Notes under the pieces: generated by a model
Databases searched by the model: none
Told to the model about the DNA's origin: nothing
What the model saw: the letters and a program-made list of their open reading frames with translations, nothing else
From: Podarcis erhardii
Taxonomy: Eukaryota
DNA length: 64,000 bases
Reading direction: 5' to 3' (one strand)
NCBI GenBank assembly: GCA_964252035.1
Contig: OZ176209.1
In this document: positions 4,835 through 59,867 of the stretch, piece by piece
Layout of the letters: the number at the start of each line of letters is the position of its first letter
How positions within the stretch are numbered: position 1 is the stretch's first letter
Program-made: the position numbers and the translations under genes

Positions 4835-4983
4835 GAATTACAGTTGCTTTACCCTGGATGTTGTTGCTAGTGTGGCTTTTGGTACCCATGTGGACTCCCA
4901 GAAGAATCCTGAGGATGCTTTTGTTAAGAACACCAGAAGATTCTTTGAACTTTCATTATTTAAACCCATCTTAATCCTAGCCA
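4835..4983 (+). CDS. TBXAS1: TBXAS1 internal exon, equivalent to human exon 7
   Basis: ttttacag|G...GCCA|gtaagt; 149 nt, phase 2 to 1; [49 protein letters not shown], with the DVVASVAFG motif of CYP5. Confidence 0.95.
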
Positions 4984-5008
4984 GTAAGTATAACATGACA
5001 GTGCTCTG

Positions 5009-5175
5009 AAGAATCTGAAGAAGTGTGCATGCACACGATCTCTGAAGTATCTGAAGAAGTGTGCATGCACACGAAAGCTCATACCAAGAACTGACTTAGT
5101 TGGTCTTTAAGGTGCTACTGGAAGGAATTTGTTTTGTTTTGACTATGGCAGACCAACACGGCTACCTATCTGCAA
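5009..5175 (+). mobile_element. Short Penelope-like element terminal fragment, or retrozyme-like insertion
   Basis: Flanked by 14-bp direct repeat ATGACAGTGCTCTG (4995-5008, 5176-5189); contains CTGAAGAAGT..CACGAAAGCTCATA..GTTGGTCTTTAAGGTGCTAC, resembling recalled reptile Penelope terminal sequence. Confidence 0.75.
5047..5084 (+). ncRNA. Minimal type I hammerhead ribozyme motif
   Basis: Stem I GUAU(5047-5050)/AUAC(5081-5084); core CUGAAGA(5051-5057) plus extra A; stem II GUGUGC-AU-GCACAC; GAAA(5073-5076); palindromic AGCU helix III; predicted cleavage CUC| after 5080. Confidence 0.75.
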
Positions 5176-6099
5176 ATGACAGTGCTCTGTACATGGTCCA
5201 ACTGTTCCTATTTTTTCCCTTAAACAATTGTTTGTTACAAACCAAAAGTTGTCCATGACAGTGGTTTAGAATGCAACAGGGAAGAAGAAAGATTATGCAA
5301 GGGCCTCAAACATGTGTAAAAGGAGAATGTATTAATACAGTTAAATTAAGGGTCACACACCTTTTTTGGACTAGTGGGTGCCCTAGAGAACAGTGTATAA
5401 CATGAAATTCGATAATACAGTCATGGTGACATTTCCCCCATAAATTTCCAACTATAAAATGCTTAACCTGCCCCCCCCAATGCCAACCCTAAACCAAAGA
5501 TTAGGTTGTGAACCCACTTACTAGGGAGTAAACCCCTTTAAATACAAAGAGGCTTCTGAATAGATGTGTGTACTGTAACTACACAGTGAATTCTTAATTA
5601 GTGCCTGGGTTTAGGCCATGCAGAGCTAGAGATATGCCCAAACCTCTTTGCAAAGTTTTCACATTTGCCTTTTTTTCCAGGGAGGGGAGGGAGAAGATTC
5701 TTTAACACCCACCAACACTTATAGTTTAGTAGTATTTGCAGAAAATAACTTCTGGGGACCCTTTTATTTCAGACAAACCTTCCACATGAAAGATGTATCT
5801 TGGTTGCTAGGGAAAAGAAAGTGCAAACTACAGGGGTCCCTAGTTCTGCTGGATCTCTCAGCGGCCTTTGATACATCAGAAGTAGCAAAAGTGCACTAAA
5901 AGGATAAGTAAGTCCCATTGAATTCAATAGGGCCCATTCCTAGGTTAGTGGGTACAGGATTGCAGCCTAAGTAGATTAAAAAATGAGCTTGTTTATTTGT
6001 GTATGGCATTTGTGTGTTACCTCATATCATCAAGTTTTCTGGGCAGTTTACAGTAAGTAAGTAAAAATAATTTAAATACAGAATAATCATAAATCCATC

Positions 6100-8607: not shown

Positions 8608-8971
8608 GGATAGACATGGGTGGTGCTGTGGTCTAAACCACAGAGCCTAGGGCTTGCTGATTGGAAGGTTGGTGGTTCGAATCCCTGCGACGGGGTGAGC
8701 TCCCGTTGCTCAGTCCCAGCTCCTGCCAACCTAGCAGTTTGAAAGCCCATCAAAGTGCAAGTAGATAAATAGGTGGGAAAGTAAACACTATTTCCATGCG
8801 CTGCTCTGGTTTCACCTGAAGCGGCTTAGTCATGCTGGCCACATGACCTGGAAAAATTGTCTGTGGACAAACGTCAGCTCCCTTGGCCAGTAAAGCGAGA
8901 TGGGCACTGCAACCCCAGAGTTGTCCGTGACTGGACTTAACTGTCAGGGGTCCTTTACCTTTTTTTTTTTT
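8608..8971 (+). mobile_element. Sauria SINE
   Basis: gggtggtgctgtggtctaaaccacagagcc..ggttcgaatccc..gagctcccgttgc..gtcaggggtcctttacct; 13-bp TSD TAGGATAGACATG (8595-8607, 8972-8984). Confidence 0.85.
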
Positions 8972-8976
8972 TAGGA

Positions 8977-16212: not shown

Positions 16213-16383
16213 TGTATTTTAAAGGTTTTTGGTGCATGCTTATGCACCTTCGTCTAATGTCCCCCACTCCAGTGTATCCCCCCACCACAATGCAGCTGAT
16301 GAGATAATAGGTGTCACAAGATTCCTTTGATTTAACAAATGAACCTGCTCAGTTTTCTGCATCAAAATACTGCAAATAATATA

Positions 16384-16736
16384 AAAAGGTAAAGGGACCC
16401 CTGACCATGAGGTCTAGTTGCGGACGACTCTGTGGTTTCGGCACTCATCTCACTTTACTGGTCGAGGGAGCCGGCGTACAGCTTCCAGGTCATGTGGCCA
16501 GCATGACTAAGCTGCTTCTGGCAAACCAGAGCAGCGCATGGAAATGCAGTTTACCTTCCCACTGGAGCGGTACCTATTTATCTACTTGCACTTTGATGTG
16601 CTTTCGAACTGCTTGGTTGGCAGGAGCAGGGACCAAGCAATGGGAGATCACCCTGTTGCGGGGATTCGAACCGCCGACCTTCTGATCGGCAAGCCCTAGG
16701 CTCTGTGGTTTAACCCACAGCGCCACCCACGTCCCA
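16384..16736 (-). mobile_element. Sauria SINE
   Basis: Reverse complement of the same family; near-perfect TSD TGCA(A/T)ATAATATA (16371-16383, 16738-16750). Confidence 0.85.
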
Positions 16737-19259: not shown

Positions 19260-19992
19260 GTTTGGGCACTCGTAATATAGCCTGATCATTATCATCCTTT
19301 TCATTTAAGAAGACTGGTCTTAATATTGTTCCCTGTTCTGTGCTGTCCTCTCCTGTTGTTTGAACTTTTGGAAGGTTTTAAAACCTGAAGCATTGCTCAT
19401 GAGAATTAATCCAGGAAGTATCCCCCCCACCCCGCATAATTACCCTACAAAAATGTAGGTCTTCCTTCCTTCCACTGACACACTTCCCAAGTCTTCAGGG
19501 ATTTATTTCAAGGGCTTCAAACAGCTTCTGAACAAACTATTAAAAGCAGGGTTCAGAGAAAGCTAAGTGCACTTAAGCCCTATTGAAATCAATGGAACAT
19601 TAGCACACCAGTTAGAGTGCTTATATCCAATTGATTTCATTTAATTTTGTCTGAATTGTGCCCTAAGGCTAGAATGATAGTTTTAAAGAACATGATATTG
19701 TTTCCCATGGTGCATTTCTTTTGCCCCACTGTCACCTCTGTTTAAACAGGTTTTGCATGTTTTTAAGGCACTATAAGAACCTGGTTAACAATGATAATAG
19801 TGAGATGAAAGTTCATATGTGAGCAATCATGCCTCTGTCAATCCACATTCAATGCTCTGAAAGAAGTGGTTCTCTGTCTCTAGCCTTAGAAAGGTATTCT
19901 AATAATATGCACTTTACAGCCCAGTCTTAAGCGAAGCCAAAATGTTTGGACATTTCAGTCTTTGAGTTAGTAAGGATGAGTTTACATGATTA

Positions 19993-20234
19993 CAGTGGTA
20001 CCTCGGGTTACATACACTTCAGGTTACAGACGCTTCAGGTTACAGACTCCGCTAACCCAGAAATAGTGTTTCAGGTTAAGAAATTTGCTTCAGGATGAGA
20101 ACAGAAATCTTGCTCCGGCGGCGTGGCGGCAGCAGGAGGCCCCATTAGCTAAAATGGTGCTTCAGGTTAAGAACAGTTTCAGGTTAAGAACGGACCTCTG
20201 GAACAAATTAAGTACTTAACCCGAGGTACCACTG
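19993..20234 (+). mobile_element. Tigger-like MITE (~240-bp family)
   Basis: TA TSD; TIR CAGTGGTACCTCGGGTTA / TAACCCGAGGTACCACTG. Confidence 0.88.
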
Positions 20235-22344
20235 TACTGGGCTATATAAATATGAATTTGTATAATTCAGATTTTAATGCCCAAGTGATGCAAGTCTAAT
20301 ATCTGAAGTGCCTCCTCACACATTTAGCTGCCTGGTTGCTAAGATCAGCAATTGAGGCCTTGTTGGCAGTGATACTGCTTTCCGTGGTTTGAGGGACAGT
20401 GGTACATGAGAGAGTCTCCTCTGTGGTGGCTCCCAGGCTGTGGAATAACCTCTCTGAGTTGCATCTTGGGCTACCATATACTTTTTGACAATTTGCTAGG
20501 ACAAAAGGGGGGGGTGCATTTGAAATATACCCTATCTAGTCCTATGCTTGTGTTCATTGAAGACAATCTTACTCGGCTGCGAGTCATCACCAAAGAAGAA
20601 GAAGCTAGTCTGAGCCCTCTAGTCAACAGATTATAAAGTTATTCAGCTCATTCAGACAATCATATCTTGCCTTTATAATTTAAGGTATGAACAAACCTTC
20701 TGTCTATGCATGCATCACCTTCTATCCCCTCTCCCTTTTGGCAAACCACAATTAAACCCACAAGTCTTCAACTAACATAATTTTCCATTTTGTTCAAACC
20801 AGGAAATGATGGCTACCAATTCAGAACAAGCTAGGATCTTCAGCCACAGTTTACTGGTTCAGATGTTATGGGGAACTATGGTAAATTAAAGGCTCCTGAT
20901 TTTTAATCCCAGTGAGAGGAGAGGAGGGAAGGGGCTTCCTAGGCAGATACAAAGTTGAGATATCTTCTGAACTAAACCATTTACAGTTGTTGCCACACAA
21001 CCCCACCTGTAGTGGTTTTGAACACTGCAATGGAGATTAAGCAAAATATCTAATTAGTTGATCACCTCCTCTCTTTCTTTTTTAAAAAAAGAGAAACAGC
21101 TGCAGAAATGTACCGTAATACTCAATTTTGCTCCTACAGTGATAGAACATTCTCCAGCCGGTGAAGGATACAGTAAAATGTCATTGGCTTACTTCATCAC
21201 AATGTAATACCCACACAGGACGCTTGTAGAGAATGTAGTTCATTTGGTGAAAGATTTTACAGGGCTCGAGGATGGCCAAGCCAATTAATTCCCCACAATT
21301 TAGATTTAAAGCCCACAGTTGGTTTTGTTGAACCTCAGTACACTTTTTGGATGTCCTTTTCTTCTTACCGGGTCATAGCACTTAGCTGACTGCAAAAGCC
21401 AAAGCACAGTATGTTAAGTATTTCTGCTTCTTTGTTTCTCACCATTCCCATGTCAGTGATCTGATAAAAGTCCTTTGACATATATAATGAATGATTCCTT
21501 TTGTGCCCTTATCTCATTTGCCCTTTTCCTGTGCCTGCTCCTCTCCCTCAATTTTATTTCCCATCATGGCTCCAAGAATATAATTTAAAAGCTCTCCCTT
21601 GATCTTAAAAAAAAGTAAAGCAGATTAAATTATTTTTGAAAAGCATTCCAGCCTTGCTTTTCCTTCCCAGTCTGCAGCATCTCAAAAGTCAAGCTCTGCA
21701 ACCACTTCTGCATCCCCTCCCCCTTTTTTTTTGCTCTGACAGATTATGCTGGTGTTTGAGGAACTGAAAATAAATGCAATGCCATAATGCATTTAACAAT
21801 GGATTGCAAAATAGACAGCATGCCCAAACCAGCTTTAATGGAGTGGTGTTAAGTAGACCCCTGCCAAAAGTCACTATTTTCAAGGGCTTATTCTTCATGC
21901 TTTCAGAACTCTGCAGCATGAGAGCACAATAGTGTGTTGCGCTTCCACACTGGTGGTGAAAATATGAGATGACAGATTCTCAGTAAGCATAGGATATAGG
22001 CGGAATGTGACATATTTGAAGCAATGACCTGGATCAAAAGACCTGTGGAACTAGTTCCATGTGCCCAAGTGGGGTTTAGACAGCCCCCTGCCCCAAATTC
22101 CAGATGGCAAACCTCTTTTGAAACTGAGAGGACAGTCAAAAGTAGTTTGTGACATGGCACAGGAATCTTAAAAGCACCCAAGGGGAATACCCAAGCTGTT
22201 TGGATTATAGCCAACATTTTAGGCAATGTTACATGAGGAATGTGCCCAGGATTGTCTTGCACATAGGCTAAAAACCTCTGTAATGAGACAGGGGTGTCAT
22301 TTTTTGTCCTTTCCCATCCACTAATATTGGCACAATGTGTAATA

Positions 22345-23273
22345 TTGTAAAAAGAGGTCCTATGGCTGGGTCGGGATGGCATGGGGATGAGGGACCAACT
22401 CCCTTCTCTTGTGGGGCCCCAATTAGTGCCATTGTCTTCCGTTAAGAGTTTGGGTGTAATCCTTGACGCCTCCCTTTCCATGGAGGTGCAGGTTACAGCA
22501 ACAGCCAAGGCAACATTTTTCCACCTTCGCCGCATCAAGCAGTTGGTCCCTTACCTTTCCCGCCCCAACCTGGCCACAGTGATCCATGCGACGGTCATCT
22601 CCAGGCTTGACTACTCCAGGCTTGACTACTCCGGGGCTGCCCTTGAAGCTGTCCCAGAAACTCCAGCAGGTACAGAATGCTGCAGCGAGGCTCCTCACGG
22701 GGTCTCTGCCATGGGAGCATAGTCACCCAGTGCTTTTCAAGCTGCACTGGCTCCCGGTGGAGTACAGGGTCAGATTTAAGGTGCTGCTTTTGACCTTTAA
22801 AGCCCTTCATGGCCTAGGACCCTTGTACCTAAGGGGCCGCCTCTCCCGGTATGCCCCACGGAGAGCCTCAAGGTCCATAAATAGCAGCACCCTAGTGGTC
22901 CCGGGCCCTAAGGAAGTTAGATTGGCTTCAACCAGAGCCAGGGCCTTTTCAACTCTGGCTCCGGCCTGGTGGAACGCTCTGCCTCATGAGACCAGGGCCC
23001 TGCAGGATCTGATTTCTTTCCGCAGGGCCTGTAAGACAGAGTTGTTCCGCCTGGCCTTTGGCTTGGAGCCAATTTGATTCCCTCCCTCTCTTTCTTTTTT
23101 TCCTTTCCTTCTCCTCCTGCGATGAGGCTAAATTTTAATATTTTAATATTTCAATATTTTAATGTTGTATTTTAATTTTGTTTTTAAGTTGTAATCATTC
23201 AACTTGTTTTTATTATTGCTTGTAAGCCGCTCTGAGCCTGGCCTTGGCTGGGGAGGGCGGGGTATAAATAAAA

Positions 23274-23314: not shown

Positions 23315-24583
23315 GCCTACCTAGTAAAACAAAAACAAAAAACTAGGAGTCACTTTTTAAATTATAATTTCATGTTCCCTTAAGTCAGCTCTATTTAGGG
23401 CTATAAAAAGGCATTGATTTCTATTCTGACCTGTGTTAGTCATATGCAGCACTGTTCCATAATTATTTATTATTCCACACCATTCATTTTAGTTCAAAGG
23501 TAATTCATTTCAATACAAAGGAAACACAATACAAATTTGGGATGGGGTGGTGGGATCACCACTTATCATTTGTGGACTGAAACAGACAAAAAACAAACAA
23601 CAACAATGGTGAATACTGATAGTATTTTCTGAAATGATTTCCATTCCAGACTTGGGATGAATGTTGGTAGTTCTGTGGGCCCTAGGGCTTCACAGCAGAA
23701 AGAGCTAACAAAGGGTTACTTCTGCACCCTTCAGTGTGCTTTTTCTCCTCATGTTCTAATCTGCTTTGCACTTACTGCGATTCAGATCAGGACTGGTTTT
23801 TTAAAAAATGAAGTTAAGTTGATCGAATGGAATAAATTGTTTAAAATTGATTGATTAAATTTGATTTTCAAGTAATTAATTTGATTGTAAGTGGCTACCC
23901 CAAATCAACTGATGCAGTGATTATTTGGCAGTGATCGTGATTGCTCTTAAATGCAGTTACACAAAATCTGAATTTACTGACATCCCTAGCTCTATTCTCT
24001 TCTTCCAAAAAAAATCTACCGCAACACCCGCTTTATTGTTCCCTGTCATCAGTGCAAAGCAAAGACTCCATTGATCACCAAGCTACATGTCAGGATGTTA
24101 CATCATTCCTTCCCCTGCCTTTTTTTTTCAAGGAACAGTTGCCACTGGAGACTGAAATTGGGTAGAGAGGCACTGAGGAGAGGGGCTGCCTAATCCTTTC
24201 CCTTCCTTCCATGTATCTGCTTAAAACCACCCCACTCCGCTGCTTTCCCCTTTTCCTGTGGGAGAAAAGATCCAAGGTCCCAGCAGGTGGGAAAGAACTG
24301 GGGAGAGGGTGATGTGATAGGACAAGAAGAAGGAAGGAGAAGAATTGAGCAGCCCCTCTCCTAACTCATCCTTTGTTCCCAGTTTTGGGCTACTTTAAAA
24401 AAGAAGCTAAAATGAAAAGAATCACATCATCCAGCCTTTACAACACAGTATGAGTAATTGTTAGGCAATGCCAAAAACAAGGCTCGCCCCTTGGAGAAAA
24501 GAGATATCGTATAGCTGTATTAGCGTGAATTTACGTCCACATGCTTGTTCACTGACTTAATGTTTTCACTGTGCATTTTGCAG

Positions 24584-24901
24584 AGACGCAGGGATTTCCT
24601 CCAGCTGATGCTTGATGCCCGAAGCTCTGCTAATGACATCACCGTGGAACATTTTGACACGGTCAGCCAAGCCGATGTTTGCATTCAGGAAAATGAGACA
24701 TCTGCCAGCAAAGCCCGGCCTCAGAAGCAAAATCCAAAAACGTTGAGTGATGATGAAATAGCTGGCCAGGCCTCCTTATTCCTGATCGCTGGCTATGAAA
24801 CCACCAACAGCGCCCTCTCCTTTGCCACTTACCTGTTGGCCACCCATCCTGAGTGCCAGGAAAAGCTGTTACGAGAGGTGGACGAATTCTTTTCAAAACA
24901 T
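24584..24901 (+). CDS. TBXAS1: TBXAS1 internal exon, equivalent to human exon 9 (includes I-helix)
   Basis: ttttgcag|AGA...CAT|gtaagt; 318 nt, phase 0 to 0; RRRDFLQLMLDAR...DEIAGQASLFLIAGYETTNSALSFATYLLATHPECQEKLLREVDEFFSKH; long pre-I-helix insertion typical of CYP5 rather than CYP3A. Confidence 0.96.
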
Positions 24902-26414
24902 GTAAGTAGGCCCCTTGCTTGATTTTTCTGCTTTCATATATAAGGGGTGGGGGTAGGGATGCCTTCAGCCAGAGAGACCAGAATGTACTTGACAGAGTCA
25001 ACTGAAGCAGGTTATCTAAAACAGAAATTACGCACCAGTGTGACATTTAATATAATGCAAAGATTCACGTCAAAAATCAAATGCAGCTCAAAGCCACCTG
25101 TCAAACCAGGGCTGGTATATTCTTATTTCTTTGCATATTTTTTTACATACCTCCCCACTCATCATCACCATCACCACCATCATCATAATCTTTATTGCAC
25201 TAGCCAAAGGCCATGGCATCATTCACAATGGGAACAAAAAGAAAAGCAACAATAACCATAAAAACCATAAAAACATCAGGCACTGCAGATACAATAAACC
25301 ACGATCACATCTCCTAAAAATTATTTGTTTCATACGATATAATAGCAAGGGATTCTCAGGTAGAATGTGCCAGCTTAAATGTCCGAATCACCTTTGCAAT
25401 TGACCGCTATTTTATCTGGTTCTTTTCTCCTGATCTTCTTAGCTGTCAACACATATAGTGCTATTTTATAAGTTACGAAGTCATCAGTATCACTCAGCAG
25501 CCATTTCACCCTTTCCACCCTGTTTGAGTGTGTTCCAGAAATATTTACAAGTAGTAGCATTCATTGTCATTAGGGAAGACTGTAGCATCCACCTTGCATT
25601 GGATCCAGGAAGAGCTGGGAAGGACGCCTGTCTTAAACTCAAGAGGGATGTACTAATATTCTCAGTCTCGGTCAGCTTCCTATGTTCCTGTAGTTCTGGC
25701 AATCACTAAGGCAGGGATCTGGTACTCCATGCTTGTTTCTCTCTGGATTGTCAGTAGCTGTATAGGAATTTCTCCATTATCTCAATATAGAATTCTGTAT
25801 TACATTTAATGGAATTTGAGTAAATATGTATGGTAATCAGTGATATCCAAGGAACCCTCAGAACCCTCCCACTTCTGTTGTGTTCCTCATCAGCTTTGAG
25901 TGTGTCTTGTTAGACCTGTTATGGTCCATCCCCTTCACCTATAATCTCCCATCTTTTCTCCTTCACATCTTTCCCACTGTGGTGTGGATCTATTTGTAAT
26001 AAATATGAGCTCCTTGGTTCTGAAGATTCAGATATGGCATGAATAATTAAAACGGCAAATCAGTGCTATCGGAGACAGTGGTCAGATTTGCAAAGGTTTA
26101 CTGATTCTAAGCAAATAGCATTGCTTATTGAAAAGATCAAAGTACCAAAACTCAAATGGCACTTGAATGAAGTGCAACGCAATATGCATGGGAAAGGTAG
26201 CAGTTGTACTTGCAAGACGTATCAGTAAGTTGGGCATATTAATTAGTCTACTGGTCTTTTATAAGCCTTTCAAGAGTGTGCAGTCTAGAGTAGGGATGGG
26301 GAATCATTTTGAGCCCAAGGGCCACACTCTCTTCTGGCAGCCTTCAGGGGGCCACATACCAATGATGGGCAGGGCCAGGAGAAAACATGTGAATTTTACC
26401 TTTATACAGTAGTC

Positions 26415-28400: not shown

Positions 28401-28763
28401 GGGGACACGGGTGGCGCTGTGGGTTAAACCACAGAGCCTAGGACTTGCCGATCAGAAGGTCAGTGGTTCGAATCCCCGTGACAGGGTGAGCTCCCGTTGC
28501 TCAGTCCCTGCTCCTGCCAACCTAGCAGTTTGAAAGCATGTCAAAGTGCAAGTAGATAAATAGGTACCGCTCCAGCAGGAAGGTAAACAGTGTTTCTGTG
28601 TGCTGCTCTGGTTCGCCAGAAGCGGCTTAGTCATGCTGGCCACATGACCCGGAATTTGTACGCCGGCTCCCTTGGCCAATAAAGCGAGATGAGCAACACA
28701 ATCCCAGAGTCAGCCACGACTGGACCTAATGGTCAGGGGTCCCTTTACCTTTACTTTTACCTT
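28401..28763 (+). mobile_element. Sauria SINE
   Basis: ggggacacgggtggcgctgtgggttaaacc...cctttacctttac tail; flanking repeat (t)TGAAGTGA. Confidence 0.87.
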
Positions 28764-33075: not shown

Positions 33076-33323
33076 TTTATTTTCTAGAGCTGGGCTAGGT
33101 AACCAGTGGCCTTCTAGATGTTGTAGGACTCAGCTCCCATCAGCCCAACCCCAACTCCAGTGATGATGGAAGTTGTAGACCAGCAGTATCTGGAGGGCCA
33201 CAGGATCCCCCATCACTGATCTAGATATAGGAAATGGGGAGGGGATTGTTGGGAGGCCTGTTCTGAGACCTCAGGGCATACGCTCGAATAAGTTTAGCAT
33301 CCTGCCCACAGCAATTTACAATA

Positions 33324-33562
33324 CAGTGGTACCTCAGGTTAAGTACTTAATTCGTTCTGGAGGTCTGTACTTAACCTGAAACTGTTCTTAACCTGAAGCA
33401 CTTTAGCTAATGGGGCCTCCCGCTGCTGCCGCGCCGCTGGAGCACAATTTCTGTTCTCATCCTGAAGCAAAGTTCTTAAGCTCAAGCACTATTTCTGGGT
33501 TAGCAGAGTCTGTAACCTGAAGCGTATGTAACCTGAAGCATATGTAACCTGAGGTACCACTG
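33324..33562 (-). mobile_element. Tigger-like MITE (~240-bp family)
   Basis: Same TIRs and TA TSD; body in the opposite orientation to the 19993 copy. Confidence 0.88.
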
Positions 33563-33844
33563 TAAAGCAGTAAAAATGCAATAATTTACACAATCTATTT
33601 AAAATATATTAATTAGAATAGCAGAAAGCAACATCATGAGCTGACTAAAACCGACATTGCCTATGTAAATAGTTTATTTACCTTAGAGCGGAAAAGCAGA
33701 AGAGTTGTTACAGGTGAGCCTGGCTGGGGACAGATATAGGATGCCATCCCTGGAAAATTTCCTTTTTCTGACACCATTTGCCTCACCTGTGTAGCTGGGA
33801 TACACAGAGAAGGCCTCCTTGGGTGACCTCAGTGTTCGGGCAAG

Positions 33845-36185: not shown

Positions 36186-36863
36186 CTGATGATAACATTG
36201 TCAAGGACTCCCCCTGCCCCAGTGAGTAAACTGTAAGGCTGCAGCCCTAGGCACTCTTAGTGAGCAAGAAGCATCATTGAACATAGTGGAATTTACTTCC
36301 AGGTAAAGGTGCATAGGATTGCACTGTATGTAAGATAAGACACACACCAAAGAGAAAAGTGTGGGTCCCAAAACTAAAGAAATCAATAAACAGATAAAAG
36401 TCATGGGCTATCAAATATATCAAATAGAATATGAAATCAACGTATTTGATTATATCTTCTAGAAAGTACAATATATAAAATAGCTTTTTAGAATTACCAG
36501 TATAATATTAAATACTGCAGGAGTCCTTAGTTTATAATTTAGAAGACTTGCTCCAAGCCTAGTGGCTGCTTATTCTATGTACTCTCAGCTGAGTTTATGG
36601 TGGTTTATTTTCTTTCCAACTGATGCTTACTCATAAGATTCTGCGTTCACTGCAATGTTCTCATCAGTCTCCAGTGCAATGTCTTATGGTAATACGGTCC
36701 AATGTGGTCTGCTGCTTTGAAAGGGGCTTCTTAATCATCCTTAATATCACTAACAGTAGAACGACACCTGAATAATGCAACTAATGAAATATTAACCTTA
36801 AGTAACTTCCAAGCTTAAAAGTGCTTCACCACTTAATGTGAATTGTATTCAGTGTAACATATA

Positions 36864-37105
36864 CAGTGGTACCTCAGGTTACATACGCTTCAGGTTACAT
36901 TTGCTTCAGGATACAGACTCCGCTAATCCAGAAATAGTACTTTGGGTTAAGAACTTTGCTTTAGGATGAGAACAGAAATTGTGCTCCGGCGGCACGGCAG
37001 CAGCAGGAGGCCCCATTAGCTAAAGTGGTGCTTCAGGTTAAGAACAGTTTCAGGTTAAGAACAGACCTCTGGAACAAATTAAGTACTTAACCCAAGGCAC
37101 CACTG
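36864..37105 (+). mobile_element. Tigger-like MITE (~240-bp family)
   Basis: Same TIRs, TA TSD. Confidence 0.88.
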
Positions 37106-38210
37106 TATTGTTACTTTAAACTGCAGGTGTATAATCACTAACATAGTTAAATTTTGTGTGCACGCATATGTATCTAAAACATACATGTGACTTTAATCTG
37201 TATGTGTTTGTATACGTTCATAACCCTTTTTCAAAAAGAAAAGAAAAGAAAAAAACACAGAAAAGCAAAGTATTTCCACGTGGTGCCCTTTGCAAATATT
37301 AATATAAATGAAATCCTGTCAACTGCCCTGAGTCCACAAGATAGGACAATATATAATAGACCAGCATATGGCTAGTACTATTGACAGCCTTATCCACCAA
37401 GGTCTTGTCCAATCCTTTTTAAAAACACATCCATGTTGGTGGCCATCACTGCAAGTCAATGAACAGTTGTAATGGCGCCAAGGAGAAGGTGGACCCACTC
37501 AAGGAAAAGTCCCCCTGTGGGCTTCTTACCCAAGGACCCCTTGAAACCTGGAACCAGCACTGCATTGAGCATAGTCATTAGATTTACCTCATATAAACTG
37601 CTGATTCTATCAATTCAGGGCCTTCTCGGGTTATCACTTTTTAATGCTGTAAATGGATAGTTACCCTTCTTTTTTATTAGAAAATTTCCCCTCAAGGTCA
37701 GTCAGCTGGTCAGTAACTCAGCCCAGGAGGGCAGATAGAAATCACTTAGCATCTTGGTAGTGGGATTAAAATCTACTGAAAGATATTGTACAGATGGTAT
37801 TCAGTTCTTGTTGGAAGAGACAAATAAATTCTTGTCTAGTTTCCTGGCTGATGTCCTCCAAGCTGCCTATGACACAAAGCCCCACAAAGAAGTAACATTT
37901 GGGCAGCTATGTTGAACTGGCTCCACTGGCTTTGTCAAGATTATTCAACTGGAAGTTAAGCTTTGAATTTGTTTCTTCCTTTAACCTCTCAATTGGAGGA
38001 GGCAACAGATTTTGCTCATGTACAGTCCCATTGAAGGTCTTAGTTGATAATTATATTAGGGAAGCACCTTTAAAATCATAACTTGTAGGGCAACTGAAGG
38101 GAAGAGGAATCACCATCCTTACCGGGAATCATGGGGATGAGACAATAGGGGCACTTCAACTGGCACTGTAGAAGTGTTTGTTTGCTGATGGACTAGGTGC
38201 CCTCACTCAC

Positions 38211-49270: not shown

Positions 49271-49392
49271 CACGTAGAGCGCATTTTTGTCACATTCCTC
49301 CAAGGAGCTCAAGGCAGTGTACATGACTCTGTCCACCCCACATTATATGCTCATTCTGTGAGGTAGGTTAGGCTGGGAAAGAGAGGGAGATA

Positions 49393-49634
49393 CAGTGGTA
49401 CCTCGGGTTACATATGCTTCAGGTTACATATGCTTCAGGTTACAGAATCCGCTAACCCAGAAATAGTGCTTCAGGTTAAGAACTTTGCTTCAGGATGAGA
49501 ACAGAAATCGTGCTTTGGCGGTGCGGCGGCAGCGGGAGGCCCTATTAGCTAAAGTGGTGCTTCAGGTTAAGAACAGTTTCAGGTTAAGAACGGACCTCCA
49601 GAACGAATTAAGTACTTAACCTGAGGTACCACTG
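49393..49634 (+). mobile_element. Tigger-like MITE (~240-bp family)
   Basis: Same TIRs, TA TSD. Confidence 0.88.
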
Positions 49635-50714
49635 TACTGGCATGCCCAAGCTCACCTTAATGGCTGAGTGCAGAATGTGCTCTCATTCTGACTTCCTACC
49701 ATGCAAAGGGAAGCAATCATAGCCAAATCACCCAAGACATAAAAAGCACAGAAAATATACACCATCACCAGCAAACCAATTGTAATCGTGCAGTTCCTCT
49801 ACCAACCATCTTCTCATACCAGCAAGACAGAGAAAACACCAATCATAGTATAGTAATCCCACTTCTGTGTTGATGGTAAGACTTAACAAGGCACTCTATA
49901 AATCCCACTAAATCCAACAGAGATTATATCCAAGTGAATGTAGCCTATATTCCCCCTTCCCTGCTTGCTCCAGACTGTGGCCAGTGGTAGTTTCAAGGAT
50001 GAGGAATAGCAACCCTCCCCCTCAGTGACCTGAGCTGTGACAGTGTAGGCCAGCAGTTAAGAGTGTATAAAGATGAAGGAGAATTTAGGTCAGTCCTGTG
50101 AGTAGGAGTGGCAGATTCAAGGGTTGTCTCAAGACAGCTGGAATGACATGGAGGTGTAGCAGATGACTCAGTCCCACGGACAGTTTTGGAGTTAGAATCA
50201 TGTACATGGGATGAGGGAGACATCATGTTGTCCATTGCCTCAGGTAGCAGAATATATTGAGCTGGGAGACTGAGTGGTGTTGTTCCTCCAGACAATGGGG
50301 CTCAACTACATTCTTTTATGCACCGACAATAGCTTTTAATTTCTTTCATGGTTGAGGCACAAGCAAGGTATTTGTTTTCTGCTCTCATTGGTGCTCCTTT
50401 TTTGTAATATATATTAAAGGGGTTATTTCTAGGGAAAGCTAGGAGTGAGCTAGCTCTGTTTTCTGGAATATAATAAGTGCTAAAAATGAACTTTATTATT
50501 ATTATTTTTAGCAGTTCTAGCCTTCATGATTGCAAAGGCATTGTTGGCAAGATGACCATACTGCACTGGTAAAGATTCCAAATTAAAGAATCCAGTAATC
50601 TCATTTTCCCCCTTTTAGAACACACACACACACACAGTAAAAAAATAAATGATGGAAGGGGAGAATCAACATAGGGTTTTTGTGAGGGAGCTGTCAATAG
50701 TGGGATTTTTTATA

Positions 50715-50932
50715 CAGTGGTACCTCGGGTTAAGAACTTAATTCGTTCTGGAGGTCTGTTCTTAACCTGAAACTGTTCTTAGCCTGAAGCACCACTTTAG
50801 CTAATGGGGCCTCCCGATTTCTGTTCTCATCCTTAAGCAAAGTTCTTAACCCAAGGTACTATTTCTGGGTTAGCAGAGTGTGTAACCTGAAGCGTATGTA
50901 ACCTGAAGCATGTGTAACCCGAGGTACCACTG
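50715..50932 (-). mobile_element. Tigger-like MITE (~240-bp family, small internal deletion)
   Basis: Same TIRs, TA TSD; lacks the GC-rich gctgccgcgccg core. Confidence 0.85.
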
Positions 50933-51403
50933 TACTGGCATTGCATGTCAGGTACCAAAAGGATTTCTTATATTAACCAGGCCTAACATCATACAGCTTG
51001 ATTTTTTTTTTAATCAAAAGAGAATTAAGAAGTAACTGAATTCATAATCTCAGTAACAATGCTCTATTAAATACTGAACGGTTTGTCTGGAAGAGAGGTG
51101 CACAGCTGTAGCTGAAAAATGAAATATAGCCAAAGGCTTGTGCTCAGGATCCAAAGGCTAAGAAAAGTCAGGAGAAGAGATACCCCAAAGTATCTGAGAC
51201 TTCATAGCAAATAAAAATATACAGAGAGGGGACATGATAGAGCTGGCATTTGGGGGCAGCTGCCAGGACCACAGCAGAGCCCCACTGCTGTTGATGTTCC
51301 TGGAGTCCCCATTCTGGGGCTGCAAACCAGCCAACATTTTAATTACCAACAATACCTAGGCTGTCTGGGGCTGAAAGAAATTGTAATCCAAAACATCTGC
51401 AGG

Positions 51404-52378: not shown

Positions 52379-53698
52379 TGATTCACCTTTTCCCTCTTTC
52401 ATGATTTAGCTTAGTAGTTTAGTTGAAGGAAAGAAGTGACTTTGAGCAGGAAGTTTAAATAAGCTCAGACAGTTGTCATTTTCTTTTCTTTCCTTGGTAA
52501 TCAAAATTGGCTTCCTGCCAAGGGAACATAATTAAAATTATTCTTCATGGCAAGGAAAAAAAGATGTAAAGGGGAGGGTTCCTGTCTCAAAGTACATAAA
52601 CAGCTATAACTCATCTCTCTGCATACGTGTTTTAATGGCATGCTTTTTGTGACATTCTAAAAGTGGATAATGATTGCAACTTTGGATAACTATTTTATGG
52701 AAGTGGGTTTAATTTTTTTTAATAGGGTCTTTTTGTTGTTCTTGCTTGTTTTAAAATTAAACCATCATTGAAAAAATAGGCAAATGTGTCCCATACCCAG
52801 CTGTAGTCCCTAAATTATAGGGTTTTAAAAATTGCATATGGTTACTCATACACCATTACGTTAATCCACCAGGATGTAAAGATATTTTTAAAAGTCCCTG
52901 CCTGATATGAAATTAATCTTCCACTGTTCTGAATGCCTACAACTCCCACTGAAAGCAAATGGAAACTATATGTGCTCAGTAACCTTTTCAAGATGAGGAT
53001 TTCAACTGGAAAGGAGGAAGTGTTGTGGGCTTCTCTGCAAAAGTGTCCTCCTGGCTGGTTGGGGCGAGGATGAGAAAAGTTGGTAATTTCTAACAATTTT
53101 AACATGCATTTGTTTTGCATTCCAAAGGAGGCAACTATAGGGTTTCTCTTTAGGACATTTTTGCATACAGCACAAAGAACACTCTGGCTCAGAAGCCATA
53201 GCAAACATATGGAGGCAACTTCACTTTTTCCCCAGTCTTGCTGGTGCTGTGCTACCCAGGGCTAAGCCATGGTTTGACTTAGCATTACAGCCAAACCCCG
53301 GGTTTGTGGTTTGTCTCCTCCAGACAAATAGTGAGCCAAGAATAAACAGGCTATACAGATCATGGTTTGTCTGGAGTGAGACAGACCATGAGGATGGGTT
53401 TGGGCATAACACTAAGCCAAACCAAAGTACCAGTGGGCCAGTTTTGAATCAGATCTTCATTGCAGACAGTGTAGTCACTTAGACTTACTTCAAAGTACAG
53501 ATGTTTATAATGATAGCTTTGAACCTTACACATGAAAACTGCTTTAAAAAATGGATAGCCCAGCCCTGTGCATATTTACTCAAGAAAAAAGTGATACTGA
53601 GCTCAGTCGTTGGGTGTGCATAATGGGCTGGTTTGTATGCCACATTAAACCATGGTTTAATGCTAACTCTGCCCAATAAAAACACTGTACTTGTTGTA

Positions 53699-53928
53699 CA
53701 GTGGTACCTCGGGTTACAAACTTAATTCGTTCCGGAGGTCCGTTTGTAACCCAAAACCCTTCTTAACCTGAGGTGCGCTTTTGCTAATGGGGCCTCGCGC
53801 TGCTGCTGCCGCTGCCTTGGCCTCGTGATTTCTGTTCTCATCCTGGGGCAGAGTTCGCAACCCAGAGCAACTACTTCTGGGTTAGCAGAGTTTGTAACCC
53901 AAAGCGTTTGTAACCCAAGGTACCACTG
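53699..53928 (-). mobile_element. Tigger-like MITE (related subfamily)
   Basis: TA|CAGTGGTACCTCGGGTTAC...GTAACCCAAGGTACCACTG|TA. Confidence 0.85.
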
Positions 53929-55761
53929 TATGCTTTCTCCCGCCTCTCTTCTTCCATATGTCCAGGAGGGGGACTTCTAATGAGTCTACTTTCAGTTTCA
54001 AATAAACTTGGCTTAGTGTCATGTTTCAGAAAACAAAAATGTCCAGTTCTCATAAAAGGCAAGCAAATATTGGGCCAGCTCAATGGGATGGCAGGTAAGG
54101 TAAACATTCAATATATGCTGCCAGCAAGTGGGTATTATTGTAAGGAAGTAGGGACAGAGCAGGAGGATTTCATACCTTTGTGAGCAAAGAATGTGGCAGG
54201 GAGAAGATTTTGTAGTGTTTCTTAATGAGATGAAGTCATATTTTATACCATGTGAGTTTCATAGAAAGCTTATGAATAAGAAACAGTTGTCCCATTGCTT
54301 TTCAATCCCAGGAAATTATTTAGACTTAAATATCCCATTGTTCAGAGCACTTATCTTTATTTATCAGCTCTCCAAGGACGCTTGCTCTGTTCTGTAGTTT
54401 CCTGTGAAACCAACAACCAGAGACAAGCAGGAAATTCTGGCTTCTATTGAGCTGGTGGGTCAGGTTCTTTTTTTAAAAAGACTGTCATTTTAGCTGCAAT
54501 TTTCGGTTTTTACTGTAGCTGCTTTATTCCCTTCTGTCCTCTTGCTTCAGTACCCTGGATAACTTGACACTAAATCCTTTGTGTGGGGATCCTGTGCCTC
54601 TAATTTGTTGACCTTATGATATTTAAACATTATTAAGAGTTGACAAAAGGGCCGTGTGCCCTTTCATTTCCCATCAAGTAGAGGCTGCCGCACGGTATCA
54701 ACAACTTGCCTTGTGCATGGTTGGCATCCCACCCCCCACCCCCGCCAAATATGAGTCATCTTTCAATCTGAGTACAGCTCTCGATGCTGATAAAGAATAC
54801 TGGGCTCCTGTTGTTATTGTGGCAGCAGCATCTTCATTGAGCACCTAATCAGTGGTTGTGGCAGCACTTTGCTCGGTTTAATAAAATGAAAAATGCATCA
54901 TGAGGATTATAGTGTAGAGCTGGAGGGTGCTGGAACGATCTGGGGCAGGGGGCAGTAGTAGGCTCAGGTGCAATTGGAGGGCATTGAATAAAAAGGAGGT
55001 TCCCGTGGAAACATGAAGAAGAGAGTTTTGAAAAACCATTCGTACATGTTTCATCTGTTGTGTAATGACGCTTACCGCAGGTCGGGTGCTGCTGTGGATC
55101 TGGCAGTCATGCTGGAGGTGAGAGGTTTTCCTGGGCTTGGCCTCGGCTTCACCCAGGCCTGGGAAGTGGATTGCAGCTTGCCTGCCTACTTGGCCAATGG
55201 CAAAATTGTGTAGGACATAGGTAGAAATATACATACATAAAAGAACGGAAATTTATCACTGCATCTTTCTGTTTGTTCACTTAAAGAAGGTAGATTTCCA
55301 GGGGGACGCGGAGTATTTTTCTTTCTTTCTGAAAAGGGGCTAGCAAGCCAAATAAGTTTGGGAACCTCTGGTGTAGAGCATCAGCGGTAAATAATCTGCA
55401 TAGCAGGCCAAAGGTTCCAGTTTCAATCCTTGGTGCCTCCGGGTAGGGCTAGGAATGTCCTATGTCTGGATTGCCACTGCCTGTAAGTGCAGACGCCACT
55501 GAGTTAGATGGACCAATAACTCTTGACTCTAATAAGGCAACTTTCTGTGTTCCTTCCTAGGCCATCCAAAGGGGTGGCAAGGCTTGCTAGTAACAAAGGC
55601 TTTTACAAGAGGAGAGAGAATGGGATTAGTCTTTTGTTTAGGTGACGGTCTCCTGTCTCTTGATAATTGACAGTAGTGACAGTTCTAGGAGTTTCGGGGG
55701 GTTGCTCTTGGACAATATGACCTCAGGTGGAGTAGCTAGACTTCCTGAATGTGTCCAGATA

Positions 55762-56002
55762 CAGTGGTACCTCTGTTTAAGAGCAGTCCTGTTTACGAAT
55801 GTTTGGGTTTACGAACTCCCCAAAACTGCAAGTAGTGTCCCGGTTTGAGAACTTTACCTCGGTCTAAGAATGGAATCTGAATGGTGGAAGAGCATCAGCG
55901 GCGGGAGGCCTCATTAGGGAAAGTGTGCCTCGGTTTAAGAATGGTTTTGGTTTAAGAACGGACTTTCAGAATGGATTAAGTTCGTAAACCAAGGTACCAC
56001 TG
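55762..56002. mobile_element. Tigger-like MITE (related subfamily)
   Basis: TA|CAGTGGTACCTCTGTTTA...TAAACCAAGGTACCACTG|TA. Confidence 0.82.
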
Positions 56003-56935
56003 TATTGCTGTTAAGCTTCTCCTTGCTTTTGCCACATGCTGGAAGAAGGCATGTGAACAAGCAGCAGCAATCTGGAAGTGAGGGAGCAGAGCCAGCATGC
56101 TCTGGGGGTTGGCAGTGGGACCCCTGATGCAAAGTGGGTCTAAGCAGGTGCCCAGTGGTGCCAACTTCTACCCCTGACCTTGGTGGACAGTGTTGGCTGT
56201 GTGATTGTGAAACAGTGGAAAGCTTGTATGCATATTGAAAAAGCAATGTTGCGATTAACTTATGTGTCTCTACCATAGTTATTGTTACAGGATAAAAACC
56301 TAAATAACATAGCTAGTTTCACTGATGTAACAAAAACAACAACAACAAAAATCTGCAGTGTTGTTGCTTTTACCTTTGTTAGTTTAAAACCCCAGATGCG
56401 ATGAAATTATAAGCGAATAAACGAATTGTGCAATCTGCTCCACTGCACAGCAACAGAGCCTACTTTCTCTGGAGCAAGATCTATAGCAGCAGTACAATAC
56501 ATCACATCTCATCCGTTTCCTCTGGCATTGCAAGATGGTCTCCTGCACTAAGTAAGCCTTCAGTGCCACTGCTGATGAGGTCTGAAATTCCATGCCCTTT
56601 GGAAGCTGCTTCTTTGGGGGGGGGGGGGAGAAGCAGAACACCACCAACCCATAACCCCTTATGTTCTGTGTAAAGGTTCATTGCAAATGACTGTCCTACC
56701 ACCTGTCCAACACTGGAGTGGTTTTTGCATTTGGCAAAATAATCTTGCAAGGCAGATTTAGCATTTTCAGTGAGCAGGGGTGCCAACTAAAGGTGGCGGA
56801 AGGGGCTTTGGCCCCCTCAATATTTGTGGGCAGGGGGCCGAGCCCCCCAATATTGAGGGGACTCCAATCAGATTGTATTCCTATCAGCAAACACTCCCTC
56901 CATACTCCATACTCCCTATGCCCCCAAATCACTGC

Positions 56936-57054
56936 ATGATTTCTGTTCTCATTCTGAAGCAAAGTTCTTAACCCAAGGTACTATTTCTGGGTTAGCGGAA
57001 TCTGTAACCTGAAGCGTCTGTAACCTGAAGCATCTGTAACCCAAGGTACCACTG
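56936..57054 (-). mobile_element. Half Tigger-like MITE
   Basis: Only one TIR (..AACCCAAGGTACCACTG|TA) and half of the family body. Confidence 0.8.
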
Positions 57055-57056
57055 TA

Positions 57057-57480
57057 TAATACCAAGCCTGGCTTGGCTACACTGGTGGGCCCAATTCCAA
57101 ATCCTTAAATGGCTCAGGAACGCAATACCTAAAGGACTGCCTCTCCCCATATGAACTGACTCAGACCCTGCAATCATTATCTGAGGCTTTTGTTTGTGTG
57201 CCTCCTCCAAGAGAGGCCCAGAGGGTGGCAACACGACAATGGCCTTTTCTGCAGTGGCTCCCCTCCTGTAGAGTGCTCTTCCCAAGGAAGCCCGCCAGGT
57301 GCCTTCATTACATATCTTTAGGTGCCAGTCGAAAGCATTCCTCTTCTCCCAGGCCTTTGGCTAATTAAGCAATCAATGGCCTTTAAAGCTGTGTTTTTGT
57401 TTTGCGTTATTATGGTATGTATTTTTATATTGTAAGCCTCCCTGTGATCTTTGAATGAATTAGAAATTTAATAAATAATA
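57057..57480 (+). mobile_element. Degenerate L2 3' fragment
   Basis: ggctcagg..cctaaaggactgcctctccccatatgaac..gccttttctgcagtggctccc..cattcctcttctcccaggccttt resembles the L2 3' coding end. Confidence 0.7.
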
Positions 57481-58570: not shown

Positions 58571-58934
58571 TCTAACAGTGTGTGTGTGTGGGGGGGAGAG
58601 TGTTATGCATTCTATTGTCCATTCACGATTTGCGCTCATTATGGTATCAGGGTGGTTCTGTGTCATCCCTGCAAACGTTTTGGGACGCAGCTTTCGTTTC
58701 TGTGTCCCATAGCTTCCTGCTGAAATCCTGTAGCTTTTTATATGTCCCAAATGTTCCAGTTTTATTGTTTTGTCTCACTTCTGTTGCGTTATAGTACAAA
58801 AAAAAAGTCTTCCAGATGAAAATAATATAACAACACTGGGTAAGACTTGCAGAAGACCTAATAAAGTAGAACGGTGTGTGGTTTAAATCCACCCCCAATG
58901 CACCGCTGTTGCTGTTGTGAGGTGTTGCAGAATA

Positions 58935-59160
58935 CAGTGGTACCTCGGGTTAAGTACTTAATTTGTTCCGGAGGTCCGTTCTTAACCTGAAACTATTCTT
59001 AACCTGAAGCACCACTTTAGCCAATGGGGCCTCCCGCTGCTGCTGCGTTGCCACTGCACGATTTTTGTTCTCATCCTGAAGCAAAGTTCTTAACCCGAGG
59101 TACTATTTCTGGGTTAGTGGAGTCTGTAACCTGAAGCGTATGTAACCCGAGGTACCACTG
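58935..59160 (-). mobile_element. Tigger-like MITE (~240-bp family)
   Basis: Same TIRs, TA TSD. Confidence 0.88.
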
Positions 59161-59867
59161 TACACCTGAAAAATACTCTAGTCTAGAGGAGCCCTAAATG
59201 TATAAGTGAATGTCTGCCTCTCCTGTCTTAGGTCTGTCTATCTTCTCCTCTACCCAGCCATCAAACTGGAACAGTAAACAGCTTTCTGTGTTACAGAGTC
59301 ATAGACATTTCCCCACCAGCACGCAAATCCACCCTAAATAAACTTAAAAATACTGTTCAACTTTCTACAGTAGAATCCCACACAAGCAGCGAGTGATTAT
59401 GCTGTGTGCTCTCTAGAGAAAAACCCTTTGGGTTTTTCCCCTTTCGTGCTCACGACACTAAAAGAAATAATAAGCACCCTTCATCAGTCTGATGGGCTCT
59501 ATTTATATACCAAGTCAGGAAGGAGGGGAGAGGTTGGAGAGCCCCCCCCCCCCGATTTAGGATTTTGACTTTTTAATTAGATTTCCTCTCACAATCACCC
59601 AGCTGTCTGGGTTTGAGCCACAGATAAGTGGAGCTAGAGCTGATAGCAAGAGCAGCAGGATTGGGGTGGGGGAGGAAAATGAAGTAATTATTATTAGTAG
59701 AAGAGTACAATGCATTCATATGTTTATATGCATATGCACAATTTTCTCAAATTAGGAGGGTTTCTCCCTCAACATGGGTTAAAGCCCATGTTGGATTAAA
59801 GGTGACTAATGCTAAACAATATTTTTGATCCTCATGTTTGACCCTCTGCTTTTCTTCTACACAGAAA

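What the first reader, a model, noticed from the sequence alone, without database searches (positions are those of the whole stretch)
5047..5084. Sense-strand hammerhead ribozyme motif ~97 nt into TBXAS1 intron 7
Seen: all elements of a minimal type I hammerhead on the same strand as the gene. Stem I GUAU/AUAC, core CUGAAGA, stem II GUGUGC/GCACAC, GAAA, and NUH triplet CUC with predicted cut after 5080. Established: Penelope-like elements carry minimal hammerheads whose palindromic helix III (here AGCU) works as a dimer; an extra A between A9 and G10.1 is tolerated in the CChMVd viroid hammerhead. Inference: every TBXAS1 pre-mRNA would carry a potential self-cleaving site next to a splice donor, which could modulate co-transcriptional splicing or TBXAS1 output. 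Helix III is only 4 bp even in the dimer, so activity may be weak.
Basis: partly seen in the sequence, partly recalled or inferred. Interest (0 to 1): 0.8.

Follow-up and report, generated by a model that had tools for sequence, protein, structure and literature searches.

The report
Penelope retrotransposon relic with minimal hammerhead
The hammerhead ribozyme motif is really there, but it is the standard minimal ribozyme carried by a short Penelope-type retrotransposon insertion in a lizard P450 (TBXAS1-like) intron, and nothing suggests that it cuts or regulates the host transcript.

Summary
The motif at 5047-5084 (+) is present letter for letter. It has a complete type I hammerhead core, with the cut predicted after 5080, 97 nt into the intron. 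It is not chance: a general minimal-hammerhead descriptor finds only this site in the window and none in 300 shuffles.

It lies inside a 167-nt insertion (5009-5175) flanked by a perfect 14-bp direct repeat. The insertion has no poly(A) and ends 95 nt after the cut site. It is built as a partial tandem: a truncated first copy of the ribozyme, then a 136-nt full unit. The motif shows every hallmark published for Penelope-like-element (PLE) minimal hammerheads. It has the same build as the Anolis Poseidon_Ac hammerhead.

So this is a transposon relic. The same scan has already reported this kind of element many times elsewhere in this lizard genome.

The proposed effect on TBXAS1 splicing is unsupported:
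- Helix III needs a dimer whose 4-bp contact has a millimolar Kd.
- The only neighbouring copy lacks A14 and helix III.
- In context the ribozyme fold is about 15 kcal/mol worse than a 14-bp pairing between the two palindromic helix II copies.
- Published PLE hammerheads cleave poorly, or only with the element's own protein.

No related copy or orthologous intron could be fetched, so the assignment rests on architecture. Interest is low.

The parts
4835..4983 (+). Coding exon of a CYP3-clan cytochrome P450 (TBXAS1/CYP5A1-like). Frame from 4836 reads [49 protein letters not shown].
   Evidence: frame; matches CYP3A4 residues 157-200 at E 3.5e-07. The acceptor position (4835, after tacag) was read from the sequence and not tested.
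4984..4989 (+). 5' splice site GTAAGT. It is left intact by the insertion, which begins 25 nt downstream.
   Evidence: read directly from the sequence.
4995..5008 (+). Left copy of the 14-bp direct repeat ATGACAGTGCTCTG (target-site duplication). Its last 5 nt, CTCTG, are also the first 5 nt of the element unit, so the true duplication is 9-14 bp.
   Evidence: D2, 100% identical, spacing 181; only about 0.15 such repeats expected per random window.
5009..5039 (+). Truncated upstream copy of the ribozyme end of the unit. With CTCTG from 5004 it matches 5040-5074 at 34 of 35 positions. It stops after G12 A13 and is followed by a T, so it has no A14, no helix III, no cleavage site and no 3' strand of helix I. 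It is not a ribozyme.
   Evidence: (D1).
5040..5175 (+). Full 136-nt unit of the inserted element: 7-nt leader, hammerhead, hairpin tail and AC-rich 3' end. It has no poly(A) and no open reading frame.
5047..5084 (+). Minimal type I hammerhead motif. Helix I is 4 bp. The core is CUGAAGA plus a bulged A. Helix II is the palindrome GUGUGCAUGCACAC. Then come GAAA, the palindromic GC, U16.1 and C17. The cut is predicted between 5080 and 5081.
   Evidence: Hallmarks as in PMC4209133.
5023..5072 (+). Competing structure: the palindromic 14-mers of the two copies (5023-5036 and 5059-5072) pair as a perfect 14-bp stem. Helix I's 5' strand and the CUGAAGA core end up in the 22-nt loop.
   Evidence: I1. 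MFE -29.6 kcal/mol, z -3.77. HHR fold disfavoured by about 15 kcal/mol.
5100..5156 (+). Predicted long hairpin of the tail (UUGGUCUU... paired with ...AGACCAA).
   Evidence: present in the MFE of every context folded. The unit as a whole does not fold better than shuffles (z +1.1), so this is a prediction only.
5148..5175 (+). 3' terminal segment GCAGA-CCAACACGGCTACCTA-TCTGC-AA. It is an AC-rich stretch between 5-nt complementary arms, and the insertion ends here.
   Evidence: Analogy with the AC-rich stem-loop where the Anolis PLE reverse transcriptase starts (PMC11167929).
5176..5189 (+). Right copy of the 14-bp direct repeat (target-site duplication).

Best explanation
The motif is the minimal hammerhead of a Penelope-like retrotransposon (PLE). 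It belongs to a short 167-nt sense-oriented insertion, 25 nt downstream of the splice donor of a TBXAS1-like P450 exon.

Inferred mechanism of origin:
- The PLE reverse transcriptase started at the AC-rich site that now forms the 3' end (5175).
- It copied the 136-nt hammerhead-to-start-site module back to the RNA's 5' end (CTCTGAAG...).
- It then switched template and re-copied the first 35 nt or so of the module.
- The cDNA was joined to the target through the 5-nt microhomology CTCTG, leaving a 9-14-bp target-site duplication.

In the element's own life cycle the hammerhead is thought to process PLE transcripts, working as a dimer and/or with the element's protein. Here it is a single passenger copy that most likely never cleaves. 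It has no helix III partner, and its helix II is sequestered by the truncated neighbouring copy. It has no role in TBXAS1 expression beyond being intronic filler.

Shown: the motif, the repeat-flanked insertion, the partial tandem, and the fold energetics. Inferred: PLE family membership (from architecture and literature, not from homologous copies), the template-switch history, and the inactivity.
For: 1. The motif is unique and non-random.
2. All four non-descriptor hallmarks of PLE minimal hammerheads in PMC4209133 are present. [quoted passage not shown]
3. The Anolis Poseidon_Ac consensus (PMC11167929 supplement) has the same build across its tandem junction: CTGAGGA, one extra base, a 6-bp helix II, then GAAA-CG-T-C. 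Here the last part is GAAA-GC-T-C.
4. The insertion has a perfect 14-bp flanking repeat and no poly(A). It is preceded by a truncated tandem copy, a classic PLE arrangement (PMC8557442).
5. Its 3' end lies 95 nt after the cut site in an AC-rich segment. In PAc the reverse-transcription start lies in an AC-rich stem-loop 111-118 nt into the ORF, which by my count on the consensus is about 82-89 nt after its cut site.
6. Against function: and the published weak or protein-dependent activity.
7. About 44% of retrozyme/PLE-derived hammerhead copies in Xenopus lie in introns, so the location is ordinary (bioRxiv 10.64898/2026.07.22.740005).
8. Earlier notes of this scan report the same kind of ~130-nt hammerhead-headed PLE module as very abundant in this genome. 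These are leads only.
Against: - No second copy of the element is in the window.
- None could be fetched from the viral or metagenome collections.
- No PLE reverse transcriptase/GIY-YIG reading frame was found among the ten longest window ORFs.
- Membership of a PLE family therefore rests on architecture, not on demonstrated homology.
- The unit shows no sequence similarity to Poseidon_Ac outside the shared hammerhead layout (by eye).
- The target site is not the ATT motif preferred by PAc.
- Equilibrium folding ignores co-transcriptional kinetics. Each palindrome could first fold as its own hairpin.
- No Rfam hammerhead model scores the site.
Confidence: 0.85

Rival explanations
1. The 136-nt unit is a separate non-autonomous mobile RNA: a retrozyme- or SINE-like derivative of a PLE pseudo-LTR, mobilised in trans by PLE proteins. 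It would not be a truncated or run-off copy of an autonomous PLE transcript.
For: The unit is short, non-coding and begins just in front of the hammerhead. Vertebrate non-LTR retrozymes derive from PLE pLTRs and average 176 bp in reptiles. Partial tandem arrangement.
Against: Only one complete hammerhead is present, so the unit cannot be excised at both ends or circularised. One copy cannot separate this reading from a 5'-truncated or transcription-start-defined PLE copy. For the host gene the outcome is the same either way.
Confidence: 0.1
2. The hammerhead is active in the pre-mRNA, alone or helped by PLE protein or chaperones. It cuts the intron 97 nt from the donor and so tunes TBXAS1 splicing or output.
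For: The catalytic core is intact and in the sense orientation. The isolated unit adopts the helix I plus helix II fold in about 10% of the ensemble. An intronic ribozyme can tune host mRNA maturation (CPEB3, PMC10919898). PAc protein assists its hammerhead.
Against: There is no helix III partner in cis and the trans contact has a millimolar Kd. The ribozyme fold is about 15 kcal/mol disfavoured in context. Monomeric PLE minimal hammerheads are inactive in vitro. No reads began or ended at the PAc presumptive cleavage site in RNA-seq. The identical flanking repeats suggest a recent insertion rather than a conserved regulatory element, although conservation was not testable here.
Confidence: 0.03
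3. The hammerhead is a chance look-alike in unique intronic DNA, unrelated to any mobile element.
For: No other copy in the window. No Rfam hit.
Against: 0 of 300 shuffles give any hit. The motif lies in a tandem-duplicated, repeat-flanked insertion. It also carries features that were not required by the descriptor: the G10.1-C11.1 pair and a helix II longer than the minimum.
Confidence: 0.02

Closest known systems
Minimal hammerheads of Penelope-like elements (min-HHR; Cervera & de la Pena 2014, PMC4209133)
   Same: Both are type I. Both have a 4-bp helix I, a long helix II, an unpaired nucleotide between A9 and G10.1, the G10.1-C11.1 pair, and no helix III hairpin, only a palindrome (A-GC-U) that can pair only in a dimer. 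They occur mostly as dispersed single copies from truncated elements, and were reported in reptiles.
   Different: Helix II here is a perfect 14-nt palindrome with an AUG at its centre. The dimeric helix III would be only 4 bp. Association of this copy with a PLE reading frame could not be shown.
Poseidon_Ac (PAc) of Anolis carolinensis and its protein-assisted hammerhead (Frangieh et al. 2024, PMC11167929)
   Same: Both come from a lizard host. Both have the same hammerhead layout, GAAA plus a 2-nt palindrome plus U-C. Both lie a similar distance (82-95 nt) upstream of an AC-rich reverse-transcription start that defines the 3' end of insertions. Partial-tandem organisation is shared.
   Different: There is no sequence similarity outside the core layout. 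In PAc the hammerhead overlaps the start of the long ORF, whereas here all three frames close within 15 codons. PAc prefers ATT targets, and no such motif is seen at this site.
Vertebrate non-LTR retrozymes (de la Pena lab, NAR 2020, PMC7229834; Li et al. 2026 preprint)
   Same: Both are short non-coding units carrying a type I hammerhead, are derived from PLE pLTRs, and are frequent in introns.
   Different: Retrozymes are tandem arrays of complete units with a hammerhead in each. Here there is one complete unit and a truncated half-ribozyme, so no excisable or circularisable RNA.
Conserved intronic ribozymes of amniotes (HH9/HH10 hammerheads; the CPEB3 HDV-like ribozyme, PMC10919898)
   Same: Both are self-cleaving motifs on the sense strand of an intron.
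   Different: Those are stable monomeric ribozymes with minute-scale self-scission and deep conservation. No Rfam HH9/HH10 model matches here. This motif lacks helix III and sits in what looks like a recent transposon insertion.

Membership tests
Hammerhead ribozyme (catalytic core) | Conserved core C3 U4 G5 A6 N7 G8 A9 / G12 A13 A14 / A15.1-U16.1 / H17, between three helices | tested here: met
   all core positions are present at 5051-5057, 5073-5076 and 5079-5080. Helices I and II are predicted in the isolated motif and in the unit.
Hammerhead ribozyme (catalytic core) | A stable helix III closing the three-way junction in the monomer | tested here: not met
   Only A-GC-U lies between A14 and C17, which cannot form a hairpin. 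The intermolecular duplex is -2.5 to -3.9 kcal/mol.
Hammerhead ribozyme (catalytic core) | Match to a curated Rfam hammerhead covariance model (Hammerhead_1, _3, _II, HH9, HH10) | tested here: not met
   No hit at gathering score or at E<=10 on 4950-5250. This is the expected outcome for a form without a helix III hairpin.
Hammerhead ribozyme (catalytic core) | Self-cleavage at the predicted site | not testable with these tools
   Needs in vitro transcription or RNA-end mapping.
PLE minimal hammerhead (min-HHR) | Unpaired nucleotide between A9 and G10.1 | tested here: met
   A at 5058. Hallmark 2 of PMC4209133.
PLE minimal hammerhead (min-HHR) | G10.1-C11.1 pair, long helix II (6-8 bp) and short helix I (4-5 bp) | tested here: met
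   G5059-C5072. Helix II is 5 bp plus a 4-nt loop in the fold, and 6-7 bp if counted on the palindrome. Helix I is 4 bp.
PLE minimal hammerhead (min-HHR) | Palindromic positions 15.2-16.2 (dimeric helix III) | tested here: met
   AGCU at 5076-5079 is self-complementary.
PLE minimal hammerhead (min-HHR) | Belongs to a many-copy consensus family with covariation within the genome | not testable with these tools
   Only this window of the genome is available, and there is no other copy in it. Earlier scan notes report abundance but were not checked by me.
Penelope-like element insertion | Retrotransposed insertion with a target-site duplication and no poly(A) | tested here: met
   14-bp perfect direct repeat flanking 5009-5175. 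The 3' end reads CTGCAA.
Penelope-like element insertion | Partial tandem (a truncated copy preceding the main copy) and/or an inverted 5' copy | tested here: met
   The truncated copy 5004-5038 precedes the unit at 5040. This arrangement is described in PMC8557442.
Penelope-like element insertion | Sequence homology to an element encoding a telomerase-like reverse transcriptase plus a GIY-YIG endonuclease | tested here: inconclusive
   No such ORF among the ten longest window ORFs. No related loci were retrievable. There is no similarity to Poseidon_Ac beyond the hammerhead layout.
Non-LTR retrozyme | Tandem repeats of a complete unit, each with an intact hammerhead, allowing excision and circularisation | tested here: not met
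   The second copy is truncated at G12 A13 and lacks a cleavage site.

The most novel reading that the evidence does not exclude
Sense-oriented intronic copies of this minimal hammerhead might be cleaved in trans-assisted fashion when the active PLE's protein is expressed, since PAc protein assists its own hammerhead. A burst of transposon expression would then cut host pre-mRNAs such as TBXAS1 close to the splice donor and lower their output. In this copy the truncated neighbour would act as a built-in lock.
Probability: 0.03. Interest if true: 0.6.

Novelty: already known. Interest (0 to 1): 0.1.

Why it matters
As it stands this is routine repeat annotation: one more dispersed copy of a ribozyme-bearing retrotransposon end in an intron. 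Its value is negative. It removes a tempting 'regulatory ribozyme next to a splice site' reading. It also shows why such copies should be checked for a helix III partner and for competing folds before any function is proposed. It would matter only if PLE hammerheads turned out to cleave host pre-mRNAs in vivo, for which there is currently no evidence.

Tried and rejected
- Rfam scans at gathering score and at E<=10 gave no hammerhead. The only hits were chance-level mir-277 and snR79.
- blastn of 4995-5195 against the window gave no second copy.
- A viral-contig scan and two metagenome-contig scans, using tail and hammerhead patterns, gave 0 loci. These collections probably hold no lizard DNA.
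- The word search with the exon peptide, meant to reach orthologous exon/intron contigs, found no candidate.
- The exact-product look-up of the exon-to-junction ORF found nothing on record. The empty-site test in relatives was therefore not possible.
- Pfam on the ten longest ORFs found no reverse transcriptase or GIY-YIG domain, only the next P450 exon.
- A literature search for 11-mers of the tail returned unrelated primer matches.
- Other TAAGGTGC sites at 22777 and 31251 are unrelated repeats.
- The supplement of PMC4209133 is not held.
- I did not run the large representative protein search, because the claim does not rest on a protein.
- I recall a similar GGTCT.TAAGGTGC...ACACGGCT repeat in turtles and crocodilians. 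I could not verify this with any tool, so I give it no weight.

Full report
**Observation.** One search shows that 5047-5084 on the + strand reads GTAT-CTGAAGA-A-GTGTGC-AT-GCACAC-GAAA-GC-T-C-ATAC. Every invariant hammerhead position is present:
- C3-A9 at 5051-5057.
- G12-A14 at 5073-5075.
- A15.1 at 5076 and U16.1 at 5079.
- C17 at 5080.

Helix I is 4 bp (5047-5050 with 5081-5084). Helix II is the perfect palindrome GTGTGCATGCACAC. The predicted cut is between 5080 and 5081.

The upstream exon (frame from 4836) ends at 4983 and is followed by GTAAGT, so the cut site is 97 nt into the intron and on the sense strand. The exon peptide matches CYP3A4 residues 157-200. An ORF at 24545-24922 matches the P450 I-helix region. 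Identity to CYP3A in the aligned stretches is only about 36-49%, which fits the other vertebrate CYP3-clan family, CYP5A1/TBXAS1. The gene name and the intron number were not verified by a tool.

**Is it chance?** I wrote a general minimal-hammerhead descriptor: helix I of at least 4 bp, CUGANGA, an optional bulge, helix II of at least 4 bp, GAAA, a palindrome of 0, 2 or 4 nt, then U and H. It finds only this site on both strands of the window and nothing in 300 dinucleotide-preserving shuffles. A looser version still finds only this site and hits 6% of Markov-random windows. No Rfam hammerhead model scores the site at gathering score or at E<=10. I read that as a limit of models that expect a helix III hairpin, not as evidence against the motif.

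**Surroundings.** The motif is not in unique intron DNA.
- A perfect 14-bp direct repeat, ATGACAGTGCTCTG, lies at 4995-5008 and 5176-5189 and brackets 167 nt. Repeats of this kind are expected about 0.15 times per random 64-kb window.
- Inside, a 35-nt stretch is duplicated in tandem: 5004-5038 and 5040-5074, identical at 34 of 35 positions.
- The first copy stops after G12 A13 and is followed by a T. It has no A14, no helix III element, no cleavage site and no 3' strand of helix I.
- The second copy opens a 136-nt unit (5040-5175). This consists of a 7-nt leader, the hammerhead, a predicted long hairpin (5100-5156), and an AC-rich end GCAGA-CCAACACGGCTACCTA-TCTGC-AA.
- There is no poly(A). 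All three frames close within 15 codons of the AUG in helix II.
- The last 5 nt of the left repeat (CTCTG) equal the first 5 nt of the unit, so the true duplication is 9-14 bp and the 5' junction shows microhomology.

**What it is.** Cervera and de la Pena (PMC4209133) defined the minimal hammerheads of Penelope-like elements. They listed the features that emerged beyond their search descriptor:
- the conserved G10.1-C11.1 pair;
- palindromic 15.2-16.2;
- a larger helix II with a short 4-5 bp helix I.

All of these are met here. They found such motifs mostly as dispersed single copies from truncated elements, including in reptiles.

The Anolis Poseidon_Ac consensus printed in the supplement of Frangieh et al. 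(PMC11167929) has the same layout across its tandem junction. It reads CTGAGGA, one extra base, a 6-bp helix II, then GAAA-CG-T-C, where this locus has GAAA-GC-T-C. A helix III that is only 4 bp in the dimer is therefore normal for lizard PLEs.

That paper also shows that PAc reverse transcription starts internally, in an AC-rich stem-loop 111-118 nt into the ORF. By my count on the consensus, that is about 82-89 nt after its hammerhead cut site, and this start defines the 3' ends of genomic copies. Here the insertion ends 95 nt after the cut site, in an AC-rich segment.

Craig et al. (PMC8557442) describe heavy 5' truncation and a truncated copy preceding the main copy as typical of PLE insertions. 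I therefore read 5009-5175 as the terminal hammerhead-to-start-site module of a PLE, or of a non-autonomous derivative of one. It would have been copied to the 5' end of its RNA, partly re-copied after a template switch, and joined to the target by microhomology. The template-switch history is inference.

**Limits of that assignment.**
- No second copy exists in the window.
- No reverse transcriptase or GIY-YIG ORF was found among the ten longest ORFs.
- No related DNA could be fetched.
- Outside the hammerhead layout, the unit does not resemble Poseidon_Ac.

Family membership thus rests on architecture. Earlier notes of this scan state that this lizard genome carries a very abundant PLE. They describe its ~130-nt hammerhead-headed terminal module as inserting alone, with reiterated tips. 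That agrees with what I see, but I could not check it.

**Does it work in the host transcript?** Four points argue that it does not.
1. The motif has no helix III in cis, and the neighbouring copy cannot provide one. The AGCU/AGCU contact is worth -2.5 to -3.9 kcal/mol, a millimolar Kd. That is far above any pre-mRNA concentration.
2. Because helix II is a palindrome, the two tandem copies pair with each other as a perfect 14-bp stem. This leaves helix I's 5' strand and the CUGAAGA core in the loop (z -3.77). With helix I and helix II enforced and the core kept single-stranded, the 4984-5190 ensemble is 15 kcal/mol less stable. The equilibrium fraction is about 3e-11, against about 10% for the isolated unit. 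Co-transcriptional folding could soften this, since each palindrome can fold on itself first.
3. The published data point the same way. Single PLE minimal hammerheads gave no detectable cleavage, and dimeric or trimeric constructs gave only low activity. The PAc hammerhead cleaved only when PAc protein was added, and no RNA-seq reads began or ended at its presumptive cleavage site.
4. Intronic location is ordinary. About 44% of retrozyme-type copies in Xenopus overlap introns.

The CPEB3 ribozyme, the real precedent for an intronic ribozyme that tunes splicing, self-cleaves with a half-life of 2-3 minutes as a monomer. This motif has none of that ribozyme's properties.

**Verdict.** This is a known kind of object, a PLE relic with its minimal hammerhead, already reported many times by this scan on other DNA of the same genome. 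Interest is low.

Noticed in passing
window 19991-20240; also 33318-33564, 36861-37110, 49388-49640, 50712-50934, 53697-53930, 55757-56007, 58931-59162, 56934-57057: A family of ~250-bp elements with terminal inverted repeats (CAGTGGTACCTCGGGTTA ... TAACCCGAGGTACCACTG). At least nine copies lie in the window, at 68-92% identity. It looks like a MITE.
   Followed up: partly
window 8613-8972, 16375-16735, 28402-28758: Three copies of a ~360-bp dispersed repeat at 80-87% identity, one of them inverted. Not classified.
   Followed up: no
window 24545-24922 (+): An ORF containing the next recognisable P450 exon (Pfam p450 positions 217-309, I-helix region). The residues expected between the two exons were not located, so another small exon may lie in between.
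   Followed up: partly
window 22640-22900 (+): A stretch resembling a common vertebrate SINE/LINE tail (…CTGCACTGGCTCCCGGTGGAGTACAGGGTCAGATTTAAGGTGCTG…). It overlaps ORFs of 163-211 aa that have no Pfam family.
   Followed up: no
window 5065-5067: An AUG sits at the centre of the palindromic helix II, as in Poseidon_Ac where the ORF starts at helix II. Here the frame closes after 9 codons. The insertion ends at base 111 counted from this AUG, inside the 111-118 window reported for PAc. This is probably coincidence.
   Followed up: partly
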